Virus record (IMG/VR): IMGVR_UViG_3300035156_000206
Location: 1-64,000 of that record
Strand: one strand, 5' to 3'
DNA length: 64,000 nt
The translations under genes were made by a program, and so were the position numbers. The notes beneath the pieces are model-generated. The model searched no databases. It was not told the origin of the DNA and was given only the letters and a program-made list of their open reading frames with translations. Shown piece after piece: positions 1,416-39,656 of this stretch (position 1 is the first letter of the stretch; every line of letters starts with the position of its first letter).

Positions 1416-1988
1416 TTAATCGTACAGCGAACGATTGCTTGGTGCTTTAGGCTTTTTGGCTTTGGTCACACCCATCTTGATCAGCCATGCTTCGAAGTCA
1501 ACCAAGGTCATCATGATTGGGCCCAGATTGATGTCATCGTCTTGATGTCCGGTGCCTTCTCTGAACTGGTTGTATGGGAGGCAGTGGCCATCATCCTGCA
1601 ACTGGATAGAGTTCTTCCACTTGATGTATGTGAGCTGGTAGAACTCAGTGGGCTTCAGGCGGCACGACAGTTGCTTGCAGATGTACTTGATGATGTCTTC
1701 ATCAGGGAGAACCACATCCTTGACTGCACCAAGGTTGGCCTTGGCCAGGAATGCATCCAGCTCATCGATCGAGGTGAAGGTCTGGCGCTTCTTGACGTTG
1801 ACAACCTCGACGTTGACAACCTCGACGTTGTATTCCTTCTTGCCCGTCAACCAGTTCTTGTCGATGTCGAGATCAATCAGAAACTGACCCTTTGGAGTCG
1901 AGGCCCGAAACACCTGCATGTCCGGAGCATCGTGATACTTAGCGCGGCGTACCAGATTGTACTTCGCTTTGAGTTCTGTGAGTGTCAT
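1416..1988 (-). CDS. Hypothetical protein
   Basis: 190-aa ORF between repeat promoter and terminator. Confidence 0.85.
   Translation of the reverse strand: MTLTELKAKYNLVRRAKYHDAPDMQVFRASTPKGQFLIDLDIDKNWLTGKKEYNVEVVNVEVVNVKKRQTFTSIDELDAFLAKANLGAVKDVVLPDEDIIKYICKQLSCRLKPTEFYQLTYIKWKNSIQLQDDGHCLPYNQFREGTGHQDDDINLGPIMMTLVDFEAWLIKMGVTKAKKPKAPSNRSLYD
1794..1830. repeat. 15-bp tandem repeat, 2.5 copies, encodes NVEVV-NVEVV
   Basis: GACGTTGACAACCTC x2 plus GACGTTG. Confidence 0.85.
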
Positions 1989-2001
1989 TTGGTTTCTCCA
2001 T

Positions 2002-2049
2002 TTCGTCAGTCGATGTAATCATTATACTGACTTTTGGAAAAATGTCAAC
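2002..2049 (-). promoter_or_regulatory. Conserved early promoter+leader repeat
   Basis: TTGACA-17-TATAAT...GACTGACGAAA. Confidence 0.9.
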
Positions 2050-2051
2050 GG

Positions 2052-2414
2052 TTACAAAATGGGGCCACGTTGTGCATACGAGTAGTTGTTGACCATATCG
2101 GATTCCATCAACTCAACAAGGGACAAGTCCTTGGCGGCGTATCCACAGTACATGTCCGTCACATCCCCTGTGATATCAAACAGGCGACCGTTGATCCTGG
2201 ACAGGATATGACAATTATTGGTCAAGCAGACAGGCTGGGCATCAAAGGCCAATGCCAACATGATGGCAAGGTTGCCGCAATTACCTTTTGAGAATATCTC
2301 GGTGATGATATTCTTGGCGCAATCATCTGGATCAAGACCAGGACACCAACTTGCATCCTGGCTCCGAAGAGCAGATAAGAACAACTGCACCTCGGCTAAA
2401 TTTATCTGTTTCAT
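2052..2414 (-). CDS. Hypothetical protein, possible Cys-His-Asp (papain/transglutaminase-like) fold
   Basis: 120 aa; GNCGNLA...HILSRINGRLFDITG spacing. Confidence 0.7.
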   Translation of the reverse strand: MKQINLAEVQLFLSALRSQDASWCPGLDPDDCAKNIITEIFSKGNCGNLAIMLALAFDAQPVCLTNNCHILSRINGRLFDITGDVTDMYCGYAAKDLSLVELMESDMVNNYSYAQRGPIL

Positions 2415-6933: not shown

Positions 6934-7620
6934 TCAACTCTTTTTTGTAAGATTGTGGTAATAGGTAGACGCACCAGCTTCTGTCAATCCTGCATCACGA
7001 ACTAGCTTCTTGATGACTGTCTTGCGGCTGCGGTCTTTGTTGCGCTTGATGATCCAGATGGCTTTGTCCTTCTTGGTACCAAATGCAATCTTCTCAGGCA
7101 TAGAGGTAGGAACATGGACTGGCTCCGAAGGAACGAGTCTGGTTTTGCAAGCAACACATTGGTACTTGTCCAACATGATCTTGCGGCGCATGATGCTGGC
7201 GTAGACGTGACTATCGTCGTTGCAAGCACAAAGGAACTTGTAGGTGGTGAACTGACGTTTGCTGATGTTCGTATCCAACCCATGACACCGATCAGGCTTC
7301 AGCCCCATCAGGATCATAATTGCCTTCCATTCCTTACCATGCGCTTGGGTATCATGTCCGTGAATGTGCTCTGTGATGACGTGAGCAACCTCATGAGGTA
7401 CAATTTGGTATAGGAACGCAGAAGGGTACGCACTCAGCAATATGGGATCGAAATTGACATGGTAGTGGATACCACGAGCCCAGCCAGCAGTCGTGTAGCT
7501 ACGCTGGTAGGTGATGATAAGAGGAGGAAGGTTTAAATCAGGATACACTGCCTCCACGCGTGCGATTGAGTCGAGGACGACAGCACGAACTTGGTTGTGG
7601 AGGTCAGGAGGGATGTTCAT
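6934..7620 (-). CDS. SprT-like zinc metalloprotease with Cys cluster and C-terminal repeat-family domain
   Basis: HEVAH (HExxH), HGKEWK, CxC...CxxC; C-terminal GLTEAGASTYYHN. Confidence 0.85.
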   Translation of the reverse strand: MNIPPDLHNQVRAVVLDSIARVEAVYPDLNLPPLIITYQRSYTTAGWARGIHYHVNFDPILLSAYPSAFLYQIVPHEVAHVITEHIHGHDTQAHGKEWKAIMILMGLKPDRCHGLDTNISKRQFTTYKFLCACNDDSHVYASIMRRKIMLDKYQCVACKTRLVPSEPVHVPTSMPEKIAFGTKKDKAIWIIKRNKDRSRKTVIKKLVRDAGLTEAGASTYYHNLTKKS

Positions 7621-7644
7621 GTCCCTATTTATGGGCAACTAATG

Positions 7645-7751
7645 CCATATGGGGTGAGTTGTGGGCCCGTAATTCGCGCTTCATCGCTAGCGCCGCCAAA
7701 GGCGGCAAAGCTTGGTTCGCACTTTTCTGTTTGCACAACCCACCCCATATG
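7645..7751 (-). ncRNA. Candidate ~106-nt structured RNA
   Basis: about 18-bp closing stem CATATGGGGTG-GGTTGTG/CACAACT-CACCCCATATG plus inner hairpins. Confidence 0.65.
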
Positions 7752-7758
7752 ACACTAT

Positions 7759-7898
7759 GTAGATGACTAAAGGGTGGCCACCGAAGGCGCCTGCGAGAAG
7801 GGAAGCCTGACGAAAGGAGGAGGTCTCAGCCCGCCTTGGGGGGAAGGTGGATCTCTACTTTACGCAAGCGGCCTCGGCGCCACTCTTTAATCGACTAC
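7759..7898 (-). ncRNA. 140-nt sRNA with C-rich loops, antisense to early leader/SD
   Basis: promoter 7905-7933 predicts +1 near 7898; ends pair; hairpin contains ACCUCCUCCUUUCGUCAG. Confidence 0.75.
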
Positions 7899-7904
7899 AA
7901 GATC

Positions 7905-7933
7905 ATTTTATCACATACATCGTCAAAAGTCAA
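7905..7933 (-). promoter_or_regulatory. sigma70-type promoter of the 140-nt sRNA
   Basis: TTGACT-17-TAAAAT. Confidence 0.8.
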
Positions 7934-7949
7934 CGATTAATTCTGGGAT

Positions 7950-8213
7950 GAAGATTCAACTAGAGCTACTGCTGATGCAGGACTTAGGTAGCTACTCCCA
8001 GTCGTACACCAGCCTTCGAGTCCATCTCCGCTGACTCGCGCTCGATCCGGCATCCCCTGTCAGGGCCCTTCAACTGATTGGCTGCATGAGTGGTCTCAGT
8101 GTTCACGAACTGGTGCTCTATGCGCGGCACTCAACGAGCCGCAGAACGCGCGTTCATTAGTACTAAGCCCTACAGGCTGACAGGCCTGTTCACTCACTTC
8201 TAGTTGAACCTTC
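7950..8213 (-). ncRNA. Candidate 264-nt multi-helix RNA
   Basis: 15-bp closing helix GAAGGTTCAACTAGA/TCTAGTTGAATCTTC; CCTGTCAG/CTGACAGG; several hairpins; no credible ORF. Confidence 0.7.
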
Positions 8214-8322
8214 TTTATGAGCATGTCTCTATATAATGGCATGCGCATAAAGAAGATCCCTCTTCTTCCTAGTTTCCGTTCTAGGTTATGGGGCACTCCC
8301 CATTCGGTAACTGCAAGTTATT

Positions 8323-8475
8323 TGGTACCGGGGGCAGGCCTCGAACCTGCAAAAAAGCAAACTCAACACGGCCGTGCCTTGTTCGCCCTTACAACCCATG
8401 GCCTCCCCACTCACCTAGTCTAGCTTCACTGAGCAGGTACTAACACAGGGCGTCTACCACTTTCGCCACCCCAGC
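8323..8475 (-). ncRNA. tRNA-Leu-like RNA with about 60 extra nt in the anticodon/variable region
   Basis: GCTGGGG/CCCCGGT acceptor, Leu-type D-arm GGCGAAAGTGGTAGACGC, GCAGG-TTCGAGG-CCTGC T-arm, ACCA; 153 nt. Confidence 0.75.
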
Positions 8476-8483
8476 ATAACTCT

Positions 8484-8645
8484 TTAGTCGACGAGGTCAC
8501 CCGCGTCAACAAAACTTTCACCCCAACGAACCATCAGGCCAAGCAGGAAGCCAACAACGGCACCGATAACAGGCTCTGCCCAGACATAATGTCCAACGAC
8601 GGCACCGAGAGCAGTACTCAACACCAACAGCAAAAATGTCAACAT
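8484..8645 (-). CDS. Small membrane protein, 53 aa
   Basis: hand-translated MLTFLLLVLSTALGAVVGHYVWAEPVIGAVVGFLLGLMVRWGE...; AAGGAG RBS. Confidence 0.65.
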   Translation of the reverse strand: MLTFLLLVLSTALGAVVGHYVWAEPVIGAVVGFLLGLMVRWGESFVDAGDLVD

Positions 8646-8661
8646 GCACTACTCCTTAAAA

Positions 8662-9059
8662 TGGGTCCCCCTTTCGATGACAGGGACTAGTGAACCTTTC
8701 GGCTCAGTAGCGGGGGATTATTTCAACCCTGCAAAGTTAGTTAGGCGTAAGCCGCTACTTTGAATTGTGAGTCGTTTGCATTTACATGCTTGCATCTTTT
8801 CGCCTTACGGCCGAGGATCGCTTCTCGTGTTGTCAACCTACGGTTATCTCACCACGTCGAAACCAGGTCGCCCCCATCAGCTGCACTTTCAGGTCTATGT
8901 CTGGTGTACCAGTCCTGAGAATTGATGTTATCTCATCTTCGAAAGCGCAGTTGGTGGAGGCGGCGGGAATCGAACCCGCGTCCGCAATGCCTTCACTTTG
9001 GCATCTGGATAGGTCTTACCCTACCCCACAACAATGTATCCGTTGATTTCTCAACTGAT
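8662..9059 (-). ncRNA. ssrA: Circularly permuted (two-piece) tmRNA
   Basis: acceptor piece ending GGTTCGATTCCCGCCGCCTCCACCA at 8952 is transcribed before GGGGGCGACCTGGTTTCGAC at 8875; tag ANDSQFKVAAYA at 8741-8779; outer ends approximate. Confidence 0.9.
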
Positions 9060-9065
9060 GAAGCC

Positions 9066-9094
9066 ATTATATAGACTTCTTCAGTTGAAGTCAA
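9066..9094 (-). promoter_or_regulatory. sigma70-type promoter of the tmRNA/ncRNA operon
   Basis: TTGACT-17-TATAAT inside inverted repeat. Confidence 0.8.
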
Positions 9095-9103
9095 CAGTTA
9101 ATT

Positions 9104-9439
9104 TCACAAGAGCTGATCAGCCAGCTTGACCAACTCGGCACGGTCCAGTTCAAACTCCGGACGCAGACGCTCCTGTTTCGACGATTGTGCCTCAGGCCAG
9201 TATGCCAGCTCATGAGGAGTCTTCATGGTCGAATGGTGAATCCCAGCCAAGCGGTTCCACTTCAACTCGGTTGGATGGAAGACCGAGATGATCGCATGCG
9301 ACTGGAAGTCATACGAGTCGCTCTTGATCGAGATGGACAACTTGTGCCCCTTCATTTCGAAAACTTGATGCAGCGTCAATGACTGACGCGCTTTAAGAAT
9401 TTCGTCCTGAATCATTTTGATCTTGGATGCTTTTGCCAT
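9104..9439 (-). CDS. Hypothetical protein
   Basis: 111 aa; downstream of repeat promoter, AAGGAG. Confidence 0.8.
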   Translation of the reverse strand: MAKASKIKMIQDEILKARQSLTLHQVFEMKGHKLSISIKSDSYDFQSHAIISVFHPTELKWNRLAGIHHSTMKTPHELAYWPEAQSSKQERLRPEFELDRAELVKLADQLL

Positions 9440-38429: not shown

Positions 38430-38588
38430 TTGAATCCCTATTCTTTATCAATTGGTTGTTGTTTCTTGATGCGAATCATACGCAAACAGAAGCAAGAAGT
38501 CAACCGATAAAAACAAGACCAGCACCTACTAGGGACGAAAAAAGAGCCCACCGAAGTGAGCTCAAGTCCTACTGCGAGAAACTAGGTT

Positions 38589-39656
38589 TTACAGCGCGAT
38601 TTCTACCGCACCAAAGAACGCACGCTCAGGTGAGCTGAATGGTGACTCGGCGATGTTACTGCCGATGTTTTGCACTTGGTCAGAAGCACAGTTGCGACGG
38701 AACACCAGTTCGTTAGCCAGCTTCTGCAAGCCAGCATCCGAGGAGTTGCCAGTTGGTGCGTAGTGAGTACACACTTCCGTGGCGATGTTCCATGCATCCA
38801 TCACAGTCAGATGGCTTGGCAACTGAGCCGCAATGGCACGGTTGTCGAGTGCTTCCATCTTGTAGTGACCCATCAAGTGGGCGTATGGATCAACGATCTT
38901 GTACATCCGATGGAGGCCGATGTTGTCTTGGTCCCCATCAGCCTTTTCCAGGCGGCCAGTAATGTGCTTGTCGAGGATCATCAGATCTGCAACAGACGCA
39001 CGTTGGATGGCCATTTCGCCCAGACGGGTTTGGATCTTGGTGTTGATTTTGTTCTGGAGTTGCAGGTTTGCGATCTCCAGGTGCTCATCCCAACGGTTCA
39101 CCAACGGGATCTGCATGTTGATGAACGGTGCGGTATTCACCATGTCGTTCATGCAGGCCACGCGACTGAGACGGAACACCGAACTCACGTTCTTCGCGAA
39201 CGGGTTCCAGTTGAATGACAGAATGGAGAAGAACTCCCCACCAGTCTTCATCATCGGGATTTCGATTTCGTCCTTGCTCCACACTTTACCGAGGCCGATG
39301 TCTTGGCTTTGGGTTCGGTTGAGCATACGGTGCGTCGCACGGTCCTGCTTGGTGGTGATCTCGGTATAGCCAATGACCTTCATCAGGTTGTCCAGAGCGT
39401 CGTCCGAGTGACTGAACCCAACATAGTTCTGGTCACGGAAGTCGACGAGCTGATCGTCCAGGAAGAAGTAATCACCACCAGTCAGGCGCTTGGCCAATTC
39501 GTTTGGCATGACCAGCTGCAGCTGTTGCGAAATCCGGCTGCTTGCTGAAAACTGGTGTTGATATTCGTCATTGACGGTAATGAGTGCGCAGACACCGGCA
39601 TGGCTGTCTACTGCTTCTACTTGAACATTAGCGTCGCGAATCATGGCATGTTGCAT
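38589..39656 (-). CDS. DUF932-like protein
   Basis: 355 aa; FRLSRVACMNDM resembles R.vC.NG motif. Confidence 0.6.
   Translation of the reverse strand: MQHAMIRDANVQVEAVDSHAGVCALITVNDEYQHQFSASSRISQQLQLVMPNELAKRLTGGDYFFLDDQLVDFRDQNYVGFSHSDDALDNLMKVIGYTEITTKQDRATHRMLNRTQSQDIGLGKVWSKDEIEIPMMKTGGEFFSILSFNWNPFAKNVSSVFRLSRVACMNDMVNTAPFINMQIPLVNRWDEHLEIANLQLQNKINTKIQTRLGEMAIQRASVADLMILDKHITGRLEKADGDQDNIGLHRMYKIVDPYAHLMGHYKMEALDNRAIAAQLPSHLTVMDAWNIATEVCTHYAPTGNSSDAGLQKLANELVFRRNCASDQVQNIGSNIAESPFSSPERAFFGAVEIAL

What the first reader, a model, noticed from the sequence alone, without database searches (positions are those of the whole stretch)
7950..8213. 264-nt ornate RNA with long closing helix and possible pseudoknots
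Seen: a 15-bp terminal helix, an 8-bp CCUGUCAG/CUGACAGG helix, several hairpins, and crossing pairings UGAGUG/CACUCA, CAGCC/GGCUG and CCAG/CUGG. It is preceded by four or five more small hairpins at 8215-8320. It has no credible ORF, and I could not find RNase P or group I core motifs. Established: large unexplained RNAs (GOLLD, ROOL) occur beside phage tRNAs. Inference: an unclassified large ncRNA.
Basis: partly seen in the sequence, partly recalled or inferred. Interest (0 to 1): 0.7.

Follow-up and report, generated by a model that had tools for sequence, protein, structure and literature searches.

The report
New structured RNA in phage tmRNA/tRNA island
A roughly 264-base non-coding RNA with a conserved, many-armed fold sits just after the tmRNA and a tRNA-like gene of a soil jumbo phage. 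It matches no catalogued RNA family and occupies the slot where a related phage carries the giant cage-forming GOLLD RNA.

Summary
The feature is real, but it lies on the minus strand (8213 to 7950). The window is the start of a 292-kb jumbo-phage record from a biocrust metagenome.

The RNA sits inside a co-oriented non-coding module:
- sigma-70 promoter
- permuted tmRNA
- 53-aa membrane peptide
- tRNA-Leu-like gene with a large insert and an encoded CCA
- five hairpins
- this RNA
- a second promoter with a second small RNA
- a SprT-like gene

No Rfam family matches, even at E<=10. GOLLD and ROOL do not match anywhere in the genome.

A syntenic homologue in another metagenomic phage (L007) is only 51% identical. 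It nevertheless keeps all 52 consensus base pairs, 14 of them through changes on both sides. A third lineage (soil contig X4) adds two independent compensatory pairs and replaces exactly the predicted variable arm. No ORF is shared.

This would be a kissing contact, either within one molecule or between molecules.

Two related phages, XacN1 and RAS14, carry GOLLD; in XacN1 it lies downstream of the tmRNA, the same slot as here.

Verdict: a genuine new structured ncRNA family with a narrow distribution. Its function is unknown, and no transcript data could be obtained.

The parts
7950..8213 (-). The structured ncRNA (264 nt). Below, p = position in the RNA, and window coordinate = 8214 - p.
   Evidence: Fold z=-3.16. 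The homologue L007:3639-3924 scores 315 bits with model R1, which was built from it and the window copy (so this score is not independent), and all 52 consensus pairs are kept.
8199..8213 (-). P1 5' strand. It pairs with 7950-7964 to give the 13-15 bp closing helix.
   Evidence: The sequence is conserved in L007, and the innermost pair changes on both sides (G-U to C-G).
7950..7964 (-). P1 3' strand
8191..8197 (-). P2 5' strand (GUGAGUG). It pairs with 8087-8093 (CACUCAU).
   Evidence: 3 of 7 pairs change on both sides in L007 (GUGGAUC/GAUCCAU).
8172..8189 (-). P3 hairpin: 6-bp stem with invariant loop CUGUCA (8178-8183)
   Evidence: 3 of 6 stem pairs are compensatory, and the loop is identical in L007.
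8094..8169 (-). P4 variable arm
   Evidence: L007 has a 20-nt insertion and a divergent sequence here. In soil contig X4, positions 8096-8169 are replaced by 102 other letters.
8054..8065 (-). P5 hairpin CCCU-GACA-GGGG. With the U-G pair open, the loop UGACAG is complementary to the P3 loop.
   Evidence: CCUGACAGGG is invariant in L007, and the outer pair is compensatory (C-G to U-A). Contig X3 carries A>C at p154.
8017..8038 (-). P6 hairpin: 6-bp stem with a 10-nt loop ending in AUG
   Evidence: It appears in both single-sequence minimum-free-energy folds. There are 2 compensatory pairs after a 1-nt realignment.
7971..8013 (-). P7 long 3' hairpin domain. The apical loop (7989-7996) holds the palindrome UAGCUA (AGCU in L007).
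   Evidence: 4 pairs are compensatory in L007. X4 adds A-U>G-C and C-G>U-A at p212-232 and p213-231, while the apical part 7984-8000 is unchanged.
8216..8267 (-). Hairpins HA (AAGAAGA/UCUUCUU) and HB. They abut P1 and share GAAG/CUUC with it, so alternative pairings are possible.
   Evidence: (I2). Both are present in the window and in L007.
8268..8320 (-). H1-H3 element: UUGCAGUUACCGAAU, a hairpin, AUAA, then a hairpin with loop AACGGAAA. It starts directly after the CCA of the tRNA-like gene.
   Evidence: It is conserved with covariation in L007 and in the IMG/VR record G001, where it lies between tRNA-Met and tRNA-Ser without the 264-nt RNA.
8322..8477 (-). tRNA-Leu-like gene with an ~80-nt insert and an encoded CCA. 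It probably acts as the processing signal that frees the 5' side of the downstream RNA.
   Evidence: Seen directly in the sequence. The acceptor, D and T stems covary with L007:3397-3541. ARAGORN does not call it.
8484..8645 (-). 53-aa membrane-peptide ORF with an AAGGAG ribosome-binding site
8650..9044 (-). Permuted (two-piece) tmRNA, tag ANDSQFKVAAYA
   Evidence: RF04321 at 108 bits; ARAGORN
9066..9094 (-). Sigma-70-type promoter (TTGACT-17-TATAAT) of the tmRNA operon. It is the only promoter-like site upstream of the RNA.
   Evidence: The region is conserved in L007.
7905..7933 (-). Second sigma-70-type promoter (TTGACT-17-TAAAAT), 16 nt after the 3' end of the RNA. It drives RNA2.
   Evidence: It is conserved in L007 and L126.

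Best explanation
This is a gene for a stable, structured non-coding RNA of a previously uncatalogued family. It is carried by a small clade of soil and freshwater jumbo phages.

Shown:
- It lies on the minus strand inside a conserved, co-oriented non-coding module: promoter, permuted tmRNA, small membrane peptide, tRNA-Leu-like gene with CCA, hairpins, this RNA.
- Its fold is conserved by compensatory substitution. P1 closes a multi-helix junction. P2 encloses hairpin P3 and a variable-length arm P4. Hairpins P5 and P6 and a long domain P7 follow.
- It has no conserved ORF and no match in Rfam.

Inferred:
- It has no promoter of its own. It is transcribed from the tmRNA promoter and cut out of the precursor by tRNA-type processing at the tRNA-like element just upstream.
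- Its paired 5' and 3' ends (P1) protect it from exonucleases.
- The invariant 6-nt loops of P3 (CUGUCA) and P5 (UGACAG) form a kissing contact. This either locks the two halves of one molecule together or joins molecules head to tail. The palindromic apical loop of P7 could add a second contact.
- It acts in trans as an RNA scaffold during infection, in the manner of the other large RNAs of phage tRNA islands (GOLLD, ROOL, T4 rnaC/rnaD). Their cellular role is equally unknown.
For: - Strand and fold: z=-3.16 on the minus strand against -1.8 on the plus strand. 18 of 104 pair cells are G-U.
- Homologue: L007:3639-3924 (286 nt) lies in the same module order. It is 51% identical, yet 52/52 consensus pairs are kept and 14 change on both sides. 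With the 4 invariant loop-loop pairs added (56 pairs), slid controls give 0-2 such pairs and 37-42% pairing, and 0 of 500 shuffles reach the observed values.
- Independent lineage: X4 has two compensatory pairs in P7, and its swapped segment coincides with P4.
- Third SprT lineage: it has a 1461-nt gene-free stretch of the same size upstream of SprT.
- Not coding: no shared ORF, and indels of 20, 1 and 2 nt.
- Not a known family: no Rfam match, and no GOLLD or ROOL in the genome.
- Promoters: only two sigma-70-like promoters occur in 7400-9300, at 9094-9066 and 7933-7905.
- Related phages: XacN1 has GOLLD downstream of its permuted tmRNA and RAS14 has GOLLD among tRNAs.
- Literature: GOLLD and ROOL lie near phage tRNA islands and assemble through kissing loops that covariation analysis had earlier read as intramolecular contacts (paper reading 10.1101/2024.12.08.627333).
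Against: - There is no transcript evidence. No RNA run was listed, so stability, ends and processing are all inferred.
- Only two full-length sequences and two partial ones are available. The consensus structure was derived from the same two-sequence alignment on which its pairs are counted.
- The loop-loop contact shows no covariation because both loops are invariant. Contig X3 changes one loop base, and its partner loop is not covered.
- No terminator follows the RNA, so it could simply be part of a longer read-through transcript.
- Phage-specific promoters would not be seen by the sigma-70 scan.
- The family was not found in IMG/VR, in the JGI metagenome contig collection, in GTDB representative genomes or in GenBank phages by the searches that were possible. 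Its narrow distribution limits any inference about function.
Confidence: 0.6

Rival explanations
1. It is a cis-acting part of the tmRNA/tRNA-like transcript and has no function in trans. It could be a 3' structural cap that protects the upstream RNAs from 3'-5' exonucleases. It could be a processing platform for RNase E or RNase P. Or it could be an insulator that stops read-through into the strong promoter 16 nt downstream.
For: There is no promoter of its own and no terminator. It is always found in the same place after the tRNA-like element and immediately before promoter 2. HA, HB and P1 share GAAG/CUUC strings that allow alternative pairings.
Against: A protective cap or insulator needs only a stable hairpin. 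Here seven helices, a variable arm and several invariant loops are kept at 51% identity. In record G001 the H1-H3 element after a tRNA is followed directly by another tRNA with no such RNA, so tRNA 3' processing does not need it.
Confidence: 0.2
2. It is a highly diverged or reduced GOLLD RNA, that is, a true homologue and not an unrelated RNA in the same slot.
For: It occupies the same genomic slot as GOLLD in XacN1, downstream of a permuted tmRNA among tRNA-like elements. The two phages share terminase homology at 48% identity.
Against: The GOLLD covariance model gives no match at E<=10 anywhere in the genome (also for the region). None of the conserved GOLLD strings seen in the XacN1 alignment is present (UGGAUAA, GUGUAAUCUCAG, CGCAAGG, GAAAG...CUAAUGC). 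The size is 264-286 nt, against the 416-position conserved 3' region alone of GOLLD. Model R1 finds nothing in XacN1 or RAS14.
Confidence: 0.05
3. It is a DNA-level element rather than an RNA. It could be a miniature inverted-repeat mobile element bounded by the 15-bp inverted repeat, or a replication or packaging site built from inverted repeats.
For: It has a 15-bp terminal inverted repeat and sharp boundaries.
Against: It is single-copy in the 292-kb genome. It sits at the same syntenic position in a phage that is only 51% identical in this stretch. No target-site duplication is visible in the flanks. The many G-U pairs are strand-specific. Internal helices covary, which a mobile element's interior has no reason to do.
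Confidence: 0.04
4. It is a regulatory or decoy RNA that binds a specific host or phage protein, or a host defence factor. Examples would be a tRNA- or tmRNA-directed nuclease, or a ribosome-associated factor. On this view the conserved loops are protein-binding sites, not RNA-RNA contacts.
For: Several unpaired strings are conserved: CUGUCA, GACA, GUAGCU, AUGGAC. It is linked to the tmRNA, to a tRNA-like RNA and to a neighbouring sRNA with an anti-Shine-Dalgarno-like loop. The phage carries RNA-repair-type genes such as a polynucleotide-kinase-like ORF.
Against: No protein gene is consistently adjacent. The flanks differ between the window and L007 apart from the RNAs and the small peptide. 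No known protein-binding motif family matched.
Confidence: 0.15

Closest known systems
GOLLD RNA (Rfam RF02032)
   Same: It is a phage-encoded, ornate, multi-helix RNA with no ORF, lying in a tRNA island. In the related jumbo phage XacN1, GOLLD lies downstream of the permuted tmRNA with tRNA-like elements in between. GOLLD has a conserved part plus a variable part and uses kissing loops.
   Different: There is no sequence or structure match. This RNA is a third of the length. GOLLD's conserved motifs are absent. Quaternary assembly is untested here.
ROOL RNA (Rfam RF03087)
   Same: It is a phage or prophage RNA near tRNA islands, with a variable linker region, and its function is unknown.
   Different: There is no match in the genome. 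ROOL's Rfam model has 574 positions. Its known hosts are mostly Firmicutes and rumen bacteria (my own knowledge).
Bacteriophage T4 small stable RNAs rnaC and rnaD (species 1 and 2 RNAs)
   Same: They are stable RNAs of unknown function at the distal end of the tRNA cluster of a T4-type phage, on the same strand as the tRNAs. rnaC ends in a T-arm and acceptor, like the tRNA-like gene next to this RNA. The window phage has a T4-type terminase.
   Different: They are 119 and 139 nt. Model R1 finds nothing in the T4 cluster. The resemblance concerns position and the neighbouring tRNA-like RNA, not this RNA's fold.
Six-nucleotide loop-loop (kissing) complexes such as HIV-1 TAR/TAR* and ColE1 RNA I/RNA II (my own knowledge)
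   Same: Two hairpin loops of 6 nt are fully complementary (CUGUCA and UGACAG) and closed by G-C pairs.
   Different: Here the contact is only predicted. One loop is a tetraloop unless its U-G closing pair opens.

Membership tests
GOLLD (RF02032) | Match to the family covariance model at or above 150 bits | tested here: not met
   There is no match at E<=10 in the whole 292-kb genome or in 7400-8800. The same model scores 227 bits in XacN1 and 218 bits in RAS14.
GOLLD (RF02032) | Conserved 3'-region motifs and pseudoknot (for example UGGAUAA, GUGUAAUCUCAG, GAAAG..CUAAUGC) | tested here: not met
   The motifs are seen in the XacN1 alignment. They are absent from window 7950-8213 and from L007:3639-3924.
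GOLLD / ROOL | Location in a phage tRNA island | tested here: met
   29 tRNAs plus a tmRNA in the genome. The RNA lies between the tmRNA and tRNA-like gene and the tRNA-Ser genes.
GOLLD / ROOL | RNA-only homo-oligomeric cage | not testable with these tools
   Complex prediction refuses RNA-only jobs. This needs native gels, SEC or cryo-EM.
ROOL (RF03087) | Match to the family covariance model (99.1 bits) | tested here: not met
   No match at E<=10. However, the control genomes did not ring either, so this rests mainly on the cmscan of the window.
Any Rfam 15 family (RNase P, group I/II introns, SRP, 6S, riboswitches, self-cleaving ribozymes, HEARO/omega RNAs, Y RNA) | Covariance-model match | tested here: not met
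   At gathering scores only the tmRNA and tRNAs match. At E<=10 on 7400-8800 only noise hits appear, and no family covers more than the edges of 7950-8213.
Y RNA / YrlA-type module | Ro60 (TROVE) protein encoded by the same genome | tested here: not met
   PF05731 is absent from the genome.
T4 rnaC/rnaD stable RNAs | Sequence or structure homology to T4 species 1 or 2 RNA | tested here: not met
   R1 with filters off on the T4 tRNA cluster gives only noise (best 8.7 bits on a 23-nt stretch).
Miniature inverted-repeat element | Multiple copies, or presence/absence polymorphism with target-site duplication | tested here: not met
   Single copy in the genome. Syntenic in L007. No flanking direct repeat is visible.
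New family (this RNA) | Conserved secondary structure with compensatory changes in independent lineages | tested here: met
   14 double changes and 100% pairing against L007. Two further changes in X4, which was not used to derive the structure. Only 2 full and 2 partial sequences exist, so no R-scape-type significance could be computed.
New family (this RNA) | Expressed as a discrete stable transcript | not testable with these tools
   No RNA sequencing run was listed for the stretch.

The most novel reading that the evidence does not exclude
The RNA is a compact self-assembling RNA, a third and much smaller class of phage tRNA-island RNA particle alongside GOLLD and ROOL. On this reading the heterotypic 6-nt loops of P3 and P5 pair between molecules, head to tail, to close a ring or cage. 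The palindromic P7 loop joins two such rings. The variable arm P4 points away from the interfaces.
Probability: 0.12. Interest if true: 0.8.

Novelty: new variant of a known kind. Interest (0 to 1): 0.55.

Why it matters
Phage tRNA islands repeatedly carry elaborate RNAs whose roles remain unknown: T4 rnaC and rnaD since the 1970s (my own knowledge), GOLLD and ROOL. Recent cryo-EM showed that GOLLD and ROOL are RNA-only cages.

This locus adds an unrelated, far smaller RNA in the slot where a sister phage has GOLLD. It is tightly linked to a phage tmRNA and to a tRNA-like RNA. That points to a shared selective pressure acting on this position in the genome, not on one particular RNA fold.

At 264 nt, with two complementary invariant loops, the RNA is a tractable system. 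Folding, assembly and loop-swap experiments are simple. If a host can be found for a related phage, a deletion would test what these island RNAs do.

Tried and rejected
Searches that found no homologue:
- blastn of 7640-9100 against GenBank phages found only tmRNA T-arm hits.
- IMG/VR scans with four RNA-derived patterns gave only chance hits. The exception was L107, which holds the H1-H3 element but not this RNA.
- Terminase and SprT searches in IMG/VR gave no close kin.
- The single metagenome scan and the single genome scan gave only chance hits, checked by blastn and R1.
- R1 found nothing in XacN1, Xoo-sp13, RAS14, RsoM2USA, Atu_ph07, G001, G002 or the T4 tRNA cluster.
- A search with the membrane-peptide profile returned only the two known copies.

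Sequences that exist but could not be obtained:
- The Logan contigs carrying P0003 and P0014 almost certainly carry a third full-length copy, but no DNA is served for them.
- Read laying showed relatives in four other metagenomes, but it lists only part of their differences.

Other dead ends:
- No RNA run was listed.
- RNA-RNA duplex prediction against the neighbouring RNAs was uninformative, giving only full-length artefact duplexes.

Ideas considered and rejected:
- RNase P, group I intron, SRP, 6S, T-box, retron or omega RNA. There is no Rfam match, and no adjacent RT, TnpB or IscB gene was seen among the neighbouring ORFs.
- Y RNA: the genome has no TROVE protein.
- A coding gene: no shared ORF.
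- A mobile element: single copy and syntenic.

Full report
**Where the window comes from**

The window is the first 64 kb of a 291,967-bp linear IMG/VR virus record, 84% complete by CheckV. The DNA is held almost completely by a biocrust metagenome run.

The genome carries 29 tRNA genes and one tmRNA. Its large terminase is 42-49% identical to those of the jumbo phages Xoo-sp13, XacN1, CM1/RAS14 and RsoM2USA, with Atu_ph07 at about 40%. It is therefore a distant member of that T4-like jumbo-phage group.

**The observation**

The stretch 7950-8213 does hold a 15-nt terminal inverted repeat (I6). Folded as RNA, the minus strand gives -103.9 kcal/mol with z=-3.16; the plus strand gives only z=-1.8.

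All tRNAs and the tmRNA of the window are on the minus strand. 18 of 104 base-pair cells are G-U, which would be A-C mismatches on the other strand. The RNA is therefore read from 8213 down to 7950.

No Rfam family matches, neither at gathering scores over the whole window nor at E<=10 over 7400-8800.

**Context on the minus strand**

| Feature | Coordinates | Notes |
|---|---|---|
| Sigma-70-type promoter | 9094-9066 | TTGACT-17-TATAAT |
| Permuted tmRNA | 9044-8650 | RF04321, 108 bits |
| Membrane-peptide ORF, 53 aa | 8645-8484 | AAGGAG ribosome-binding site |
| tRNA-like gene | 8477-8322 | Leu-type D arm, T arm, acceptor stem, encoded CCA, ~80-nt insert; not called by ARAGORN |
| Five hairpins | 8320-8216 | z=-3.56 |
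| The RNA | 8213-7950 | |
| Second sigma-70-type promoter | 7933-7905 | Starts 16 nt after the RNA |
| RNA2 | 7899-7640 | Very stable fold, z=-7.7 |
| SprT-like gene | 7620-6934 | PF10263 |

The simple scan found no other promoter-like site and no intrinsic terminator in 7400-9300.

**Homologues**

GenBank phages hold nothing similar apart from the tmRNA T arm. Protein-anchored retrieval through SprT found a JGI metagenome contig (L003/L007, 18.6 kb). It has the same order: tmRNA, 56-aa peptide, tRNA-like gene, hairpins, a 286-nt homologue (L007:3639-3924), promoter and RNA2.

In L007 the module is followed by an 89-aa gene and a block of tRNAs, and its upstream protein is unrelated to the window's. 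The RNA module is thus conserved while its protein neighbours are not.

The two RNAs are only 51% identical over 263 aligned columns. Even so, the RNAalifold consensus of 52 pairs is fully paired in both, and 14 pairs change on both sides. When the 3' partners are slid by 1-3 columns, pairing falls to 37-42% with 0-2 double changes. None of 500 column shuffles reaches the observed values (which counted 56 pairs because the 4 invariant loop-loop pairs were added). Since the structure was derived from this same alignment, these controls flatter it.

Independent support comes from Logan contigs laid on the window:
- A 729-nt soil contig (X4) covers 7874-8477.
- It replaces exactly 8096-8169 with 102 other letters.
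- It carries A-U>G-C and C-G>U-A at two adjacent pairs of the 3' domain.
- It leaves the apical part of that domain unchanged.

A further SprT lineage (P0014, Logan) has 1461 gene-free bases upstream of SprT.

Neither copy has an ORF shared with the other, and the indels are 20, 1 and 2 nt.

**Structure model** (p = RNA position)

- P1: p1-15 with p250-264.
- P2: p17-23 with p121-127, with 3 compensatory pairs.
- P3: hairpin p25-42, with 3 compensatory pairs and the invariant loop CUGUCA.
- P4: variable arm p45-120. It has an insertion in L007 and is swapped in X4.
- P5: hairpin p149-160, CCCU-GACA-GGGG, with 1 compensatory pair and invariant CCUGACAGGG.
- P6: hairpin p176-197, with 2 compensatory pairs after a 1-nt realignment.
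- P7: p201-243, with 4 compensatory pairs in L007 and 2 in X4. Its apical loop holds UAGCUA (AGCU in L007).

- UGAGUG/CACUCA is P2, which is nested.
- The 8-bp CCUGUCAG/CUGACAGG helix would require opening the closing pairs of P3 and P5, both of which covary.
- What remains is a perfect 6-nt complementarity between the two loops (4 nt if the U-G pair of P5 stays closed).
- Neither loop varies between the full-length copies, so there is no covariation for or against that contact.
- Contig X3 has A>C in the P5 loop, but it does not cover the P3 loop.
- CAGCC/GGCUG is not conserved.

**The upstream hairpins**

H1-H3 (8320-8268) are nearly invariant in sequence, with covarying stems. They recur in another IMG/VR phage contig directly after tRNA-Met and before tRNA-Ser, without the 264-nt RNA. 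Model R2 finds one copy per genome. They are therefore a separate small element that follows a tRNA 3' end.

HA and HB (8267-8216) occur only next to this RNA. They share GAAG/CUUC strings with P1, which allows alternative pairings.

**Comparison with known systems**

In XacN1 the unannotated 2.5 kb around the permuted tmRNA holds a full GOLLD RNA (227 bits) downstream of the tmRNA, with T-arm-like elements and promoters in between. RAS14 also has GOLLD among tRNAs.

Xoo-sp13 and RsoM2USA have the tmRNA but no GOLLD. In Xoo-sp13 the 500 nt after the tmRNA fold with z=-4.3 and contain another T-arm.

The window genome has neither GOLLD nor ROOL. Model R1 finds nothing in those five phages. The RNA is therefore not a GOLLD member, but it fills the position that GOLLD fills in a sister phage.

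T4 itself ends its tRNA cluster with the stable RNAs rnaD and rnaC, whose function is unknown. rnaC ends in a T arm and acceptor, like the tRNA-like gene here. R1 does not match them.

The literature held here states that GOLLD and ROOL lie near phage tRNA islands. It also states that they form RNA-only cages held by kissing loops, and that covariation had first assigned some of these loops to tertiary contacts. Shorter phage-associated RNAs can also build large assemblies.

**Most likely mechanism**

Shown: a conserved structured RNA gene of a new family inside a tmRNA/tRNA-like operon.

Inferred:
- It is transcribed from the tmRNA promoter.
- It is released by tRNA-type processing at the upstream tRNA-like element.
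- It is stabilised by P1.
- It acts as a folded scaffold whose P3 and P5 loops kiss.

Whether the kissing contact is intramolecular or builds multimers cannot be decided here. I put the multimer reading at about 0.12. The rivals are a purely cis-acting cap or insulator, a protein decoy, a diverged GOLLD and a DNA-level element. They are weighed in the structured fields.

**Limits**

- No expression data could be obtained.
- Only two full-length sequences are available.

**Verdict**

This is a real, unclassified structured ncRNA. It is a new variant of the known kind 'ornate RNAs of phage tRNA islands'. It is of moderate interest, and of high interest if it proves to self-assemble.

Noticed in passing
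window 8322-8477 (-); L007:3397-3541; L105 (Xoo-sp13) about 1168-1320: A tRNA-Leu-like gene. It has the D arm GGUGGCGAAAGUGGUAGACGC, the loop GUUAGUA, a T arm, an acceptor stem and (in the window and L007) an encoded CCA. It carries a structured insert of about 80 nt and is not called by ARAGORN. The acceptor, D and T stems covary between the window and L007. A similar insert-bearing copy lies near the tmRNA of Xoo-sp13, and T4 rnaC has the same kind of 3' end.
   Followed up: partly
window 8268-8320 (-); L007:3538-3607; G001 133457-133525 (L107 13045-13113): A 55-60-nt element directly after a tRNA CCA end: UUGCAGUUACCGAAU, a hairpin, AUAA, then a hairpin with the invariant loop AACGGAAA. The stems covary in three phages and there is one copy per genome. 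No Rfam family matches it.
   Followed up: yes
window 7760-7899 (-), promoter 7905-7933; L007:3985-4140; L126:1-200: RNA2 is a separate small RNA with its own strong sigma-70 promoter. It forms a long hairpin whose apical loop displays CCUCCUCCUUUC, which resembles the 3' end of 16S rRNA (an anti-Shine-Dalgarno sequence). It is conserved in three lineages. In L126 it is followed by an intrinsic terminator before SprT. Fold z=-7.7.
   Followed up: partly
window 7640-7757 (-): A 24-bp near-perfect hairpin encloses about 70 nt between RNA2 and the SprT start codon. It is present only in the window copy. L126 has a short terminator there, and L007 has a gene start.
   Followed up: no
window 8484-8645 (-); L007:3216-3386: A conserved 53-56-aa single-pass membrane peptide gene is wedged between the tmRNA and the tRNA-like gene. 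The two copies are 42-45% identical, and no other relative was found among 5.8 billion proteins.
   Followed up: partly
L091 (XacN1 AP018399.1) 1811-2224 (-), record 38570-38983 and 357365-357778; RAS14 OP752703.1 301163-301588: Full-length GOLLD RNAs (227 and 218 bits) lie in stretches of these GenBank jumbo-phage records. In XacN1 the stretch carries no annotated feature, and GOLLD sits downstream of the permuted tmRNA.
   Followed up: yes
L105 (Xoo-sp13 MN047793.1) 1880-2375 and 850-970: The unannotated 500 nt after the Xoo-sp13 tmRNA fold with z=-4.3 and contain a T-arm-like GCAUGGUUCGAAUCCAUGC. A 121-nt tRNA-like sequence with an insert (tRNA model, 24.8 bits) lies upstream of the tmRNA.
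   Followed up: no
window 8228-8240 (+) and 9063-9075 (-): The 13-nt string TCTATATAATGGC, which is the -10 region of the tmRNA promoter, recurs exactly in the opposite orientation in the apical part of hairpin HB. That apical part is absent from L007. No usable -35 box accompanies it.
   Followed up: partly
genome 268847-268922 (-) (outside the window): ARAGORN reports a tRNA of undetermined identity with a two-base 'anticodon' (ta) in the second tRNA block of the genome.
   Followed up: no
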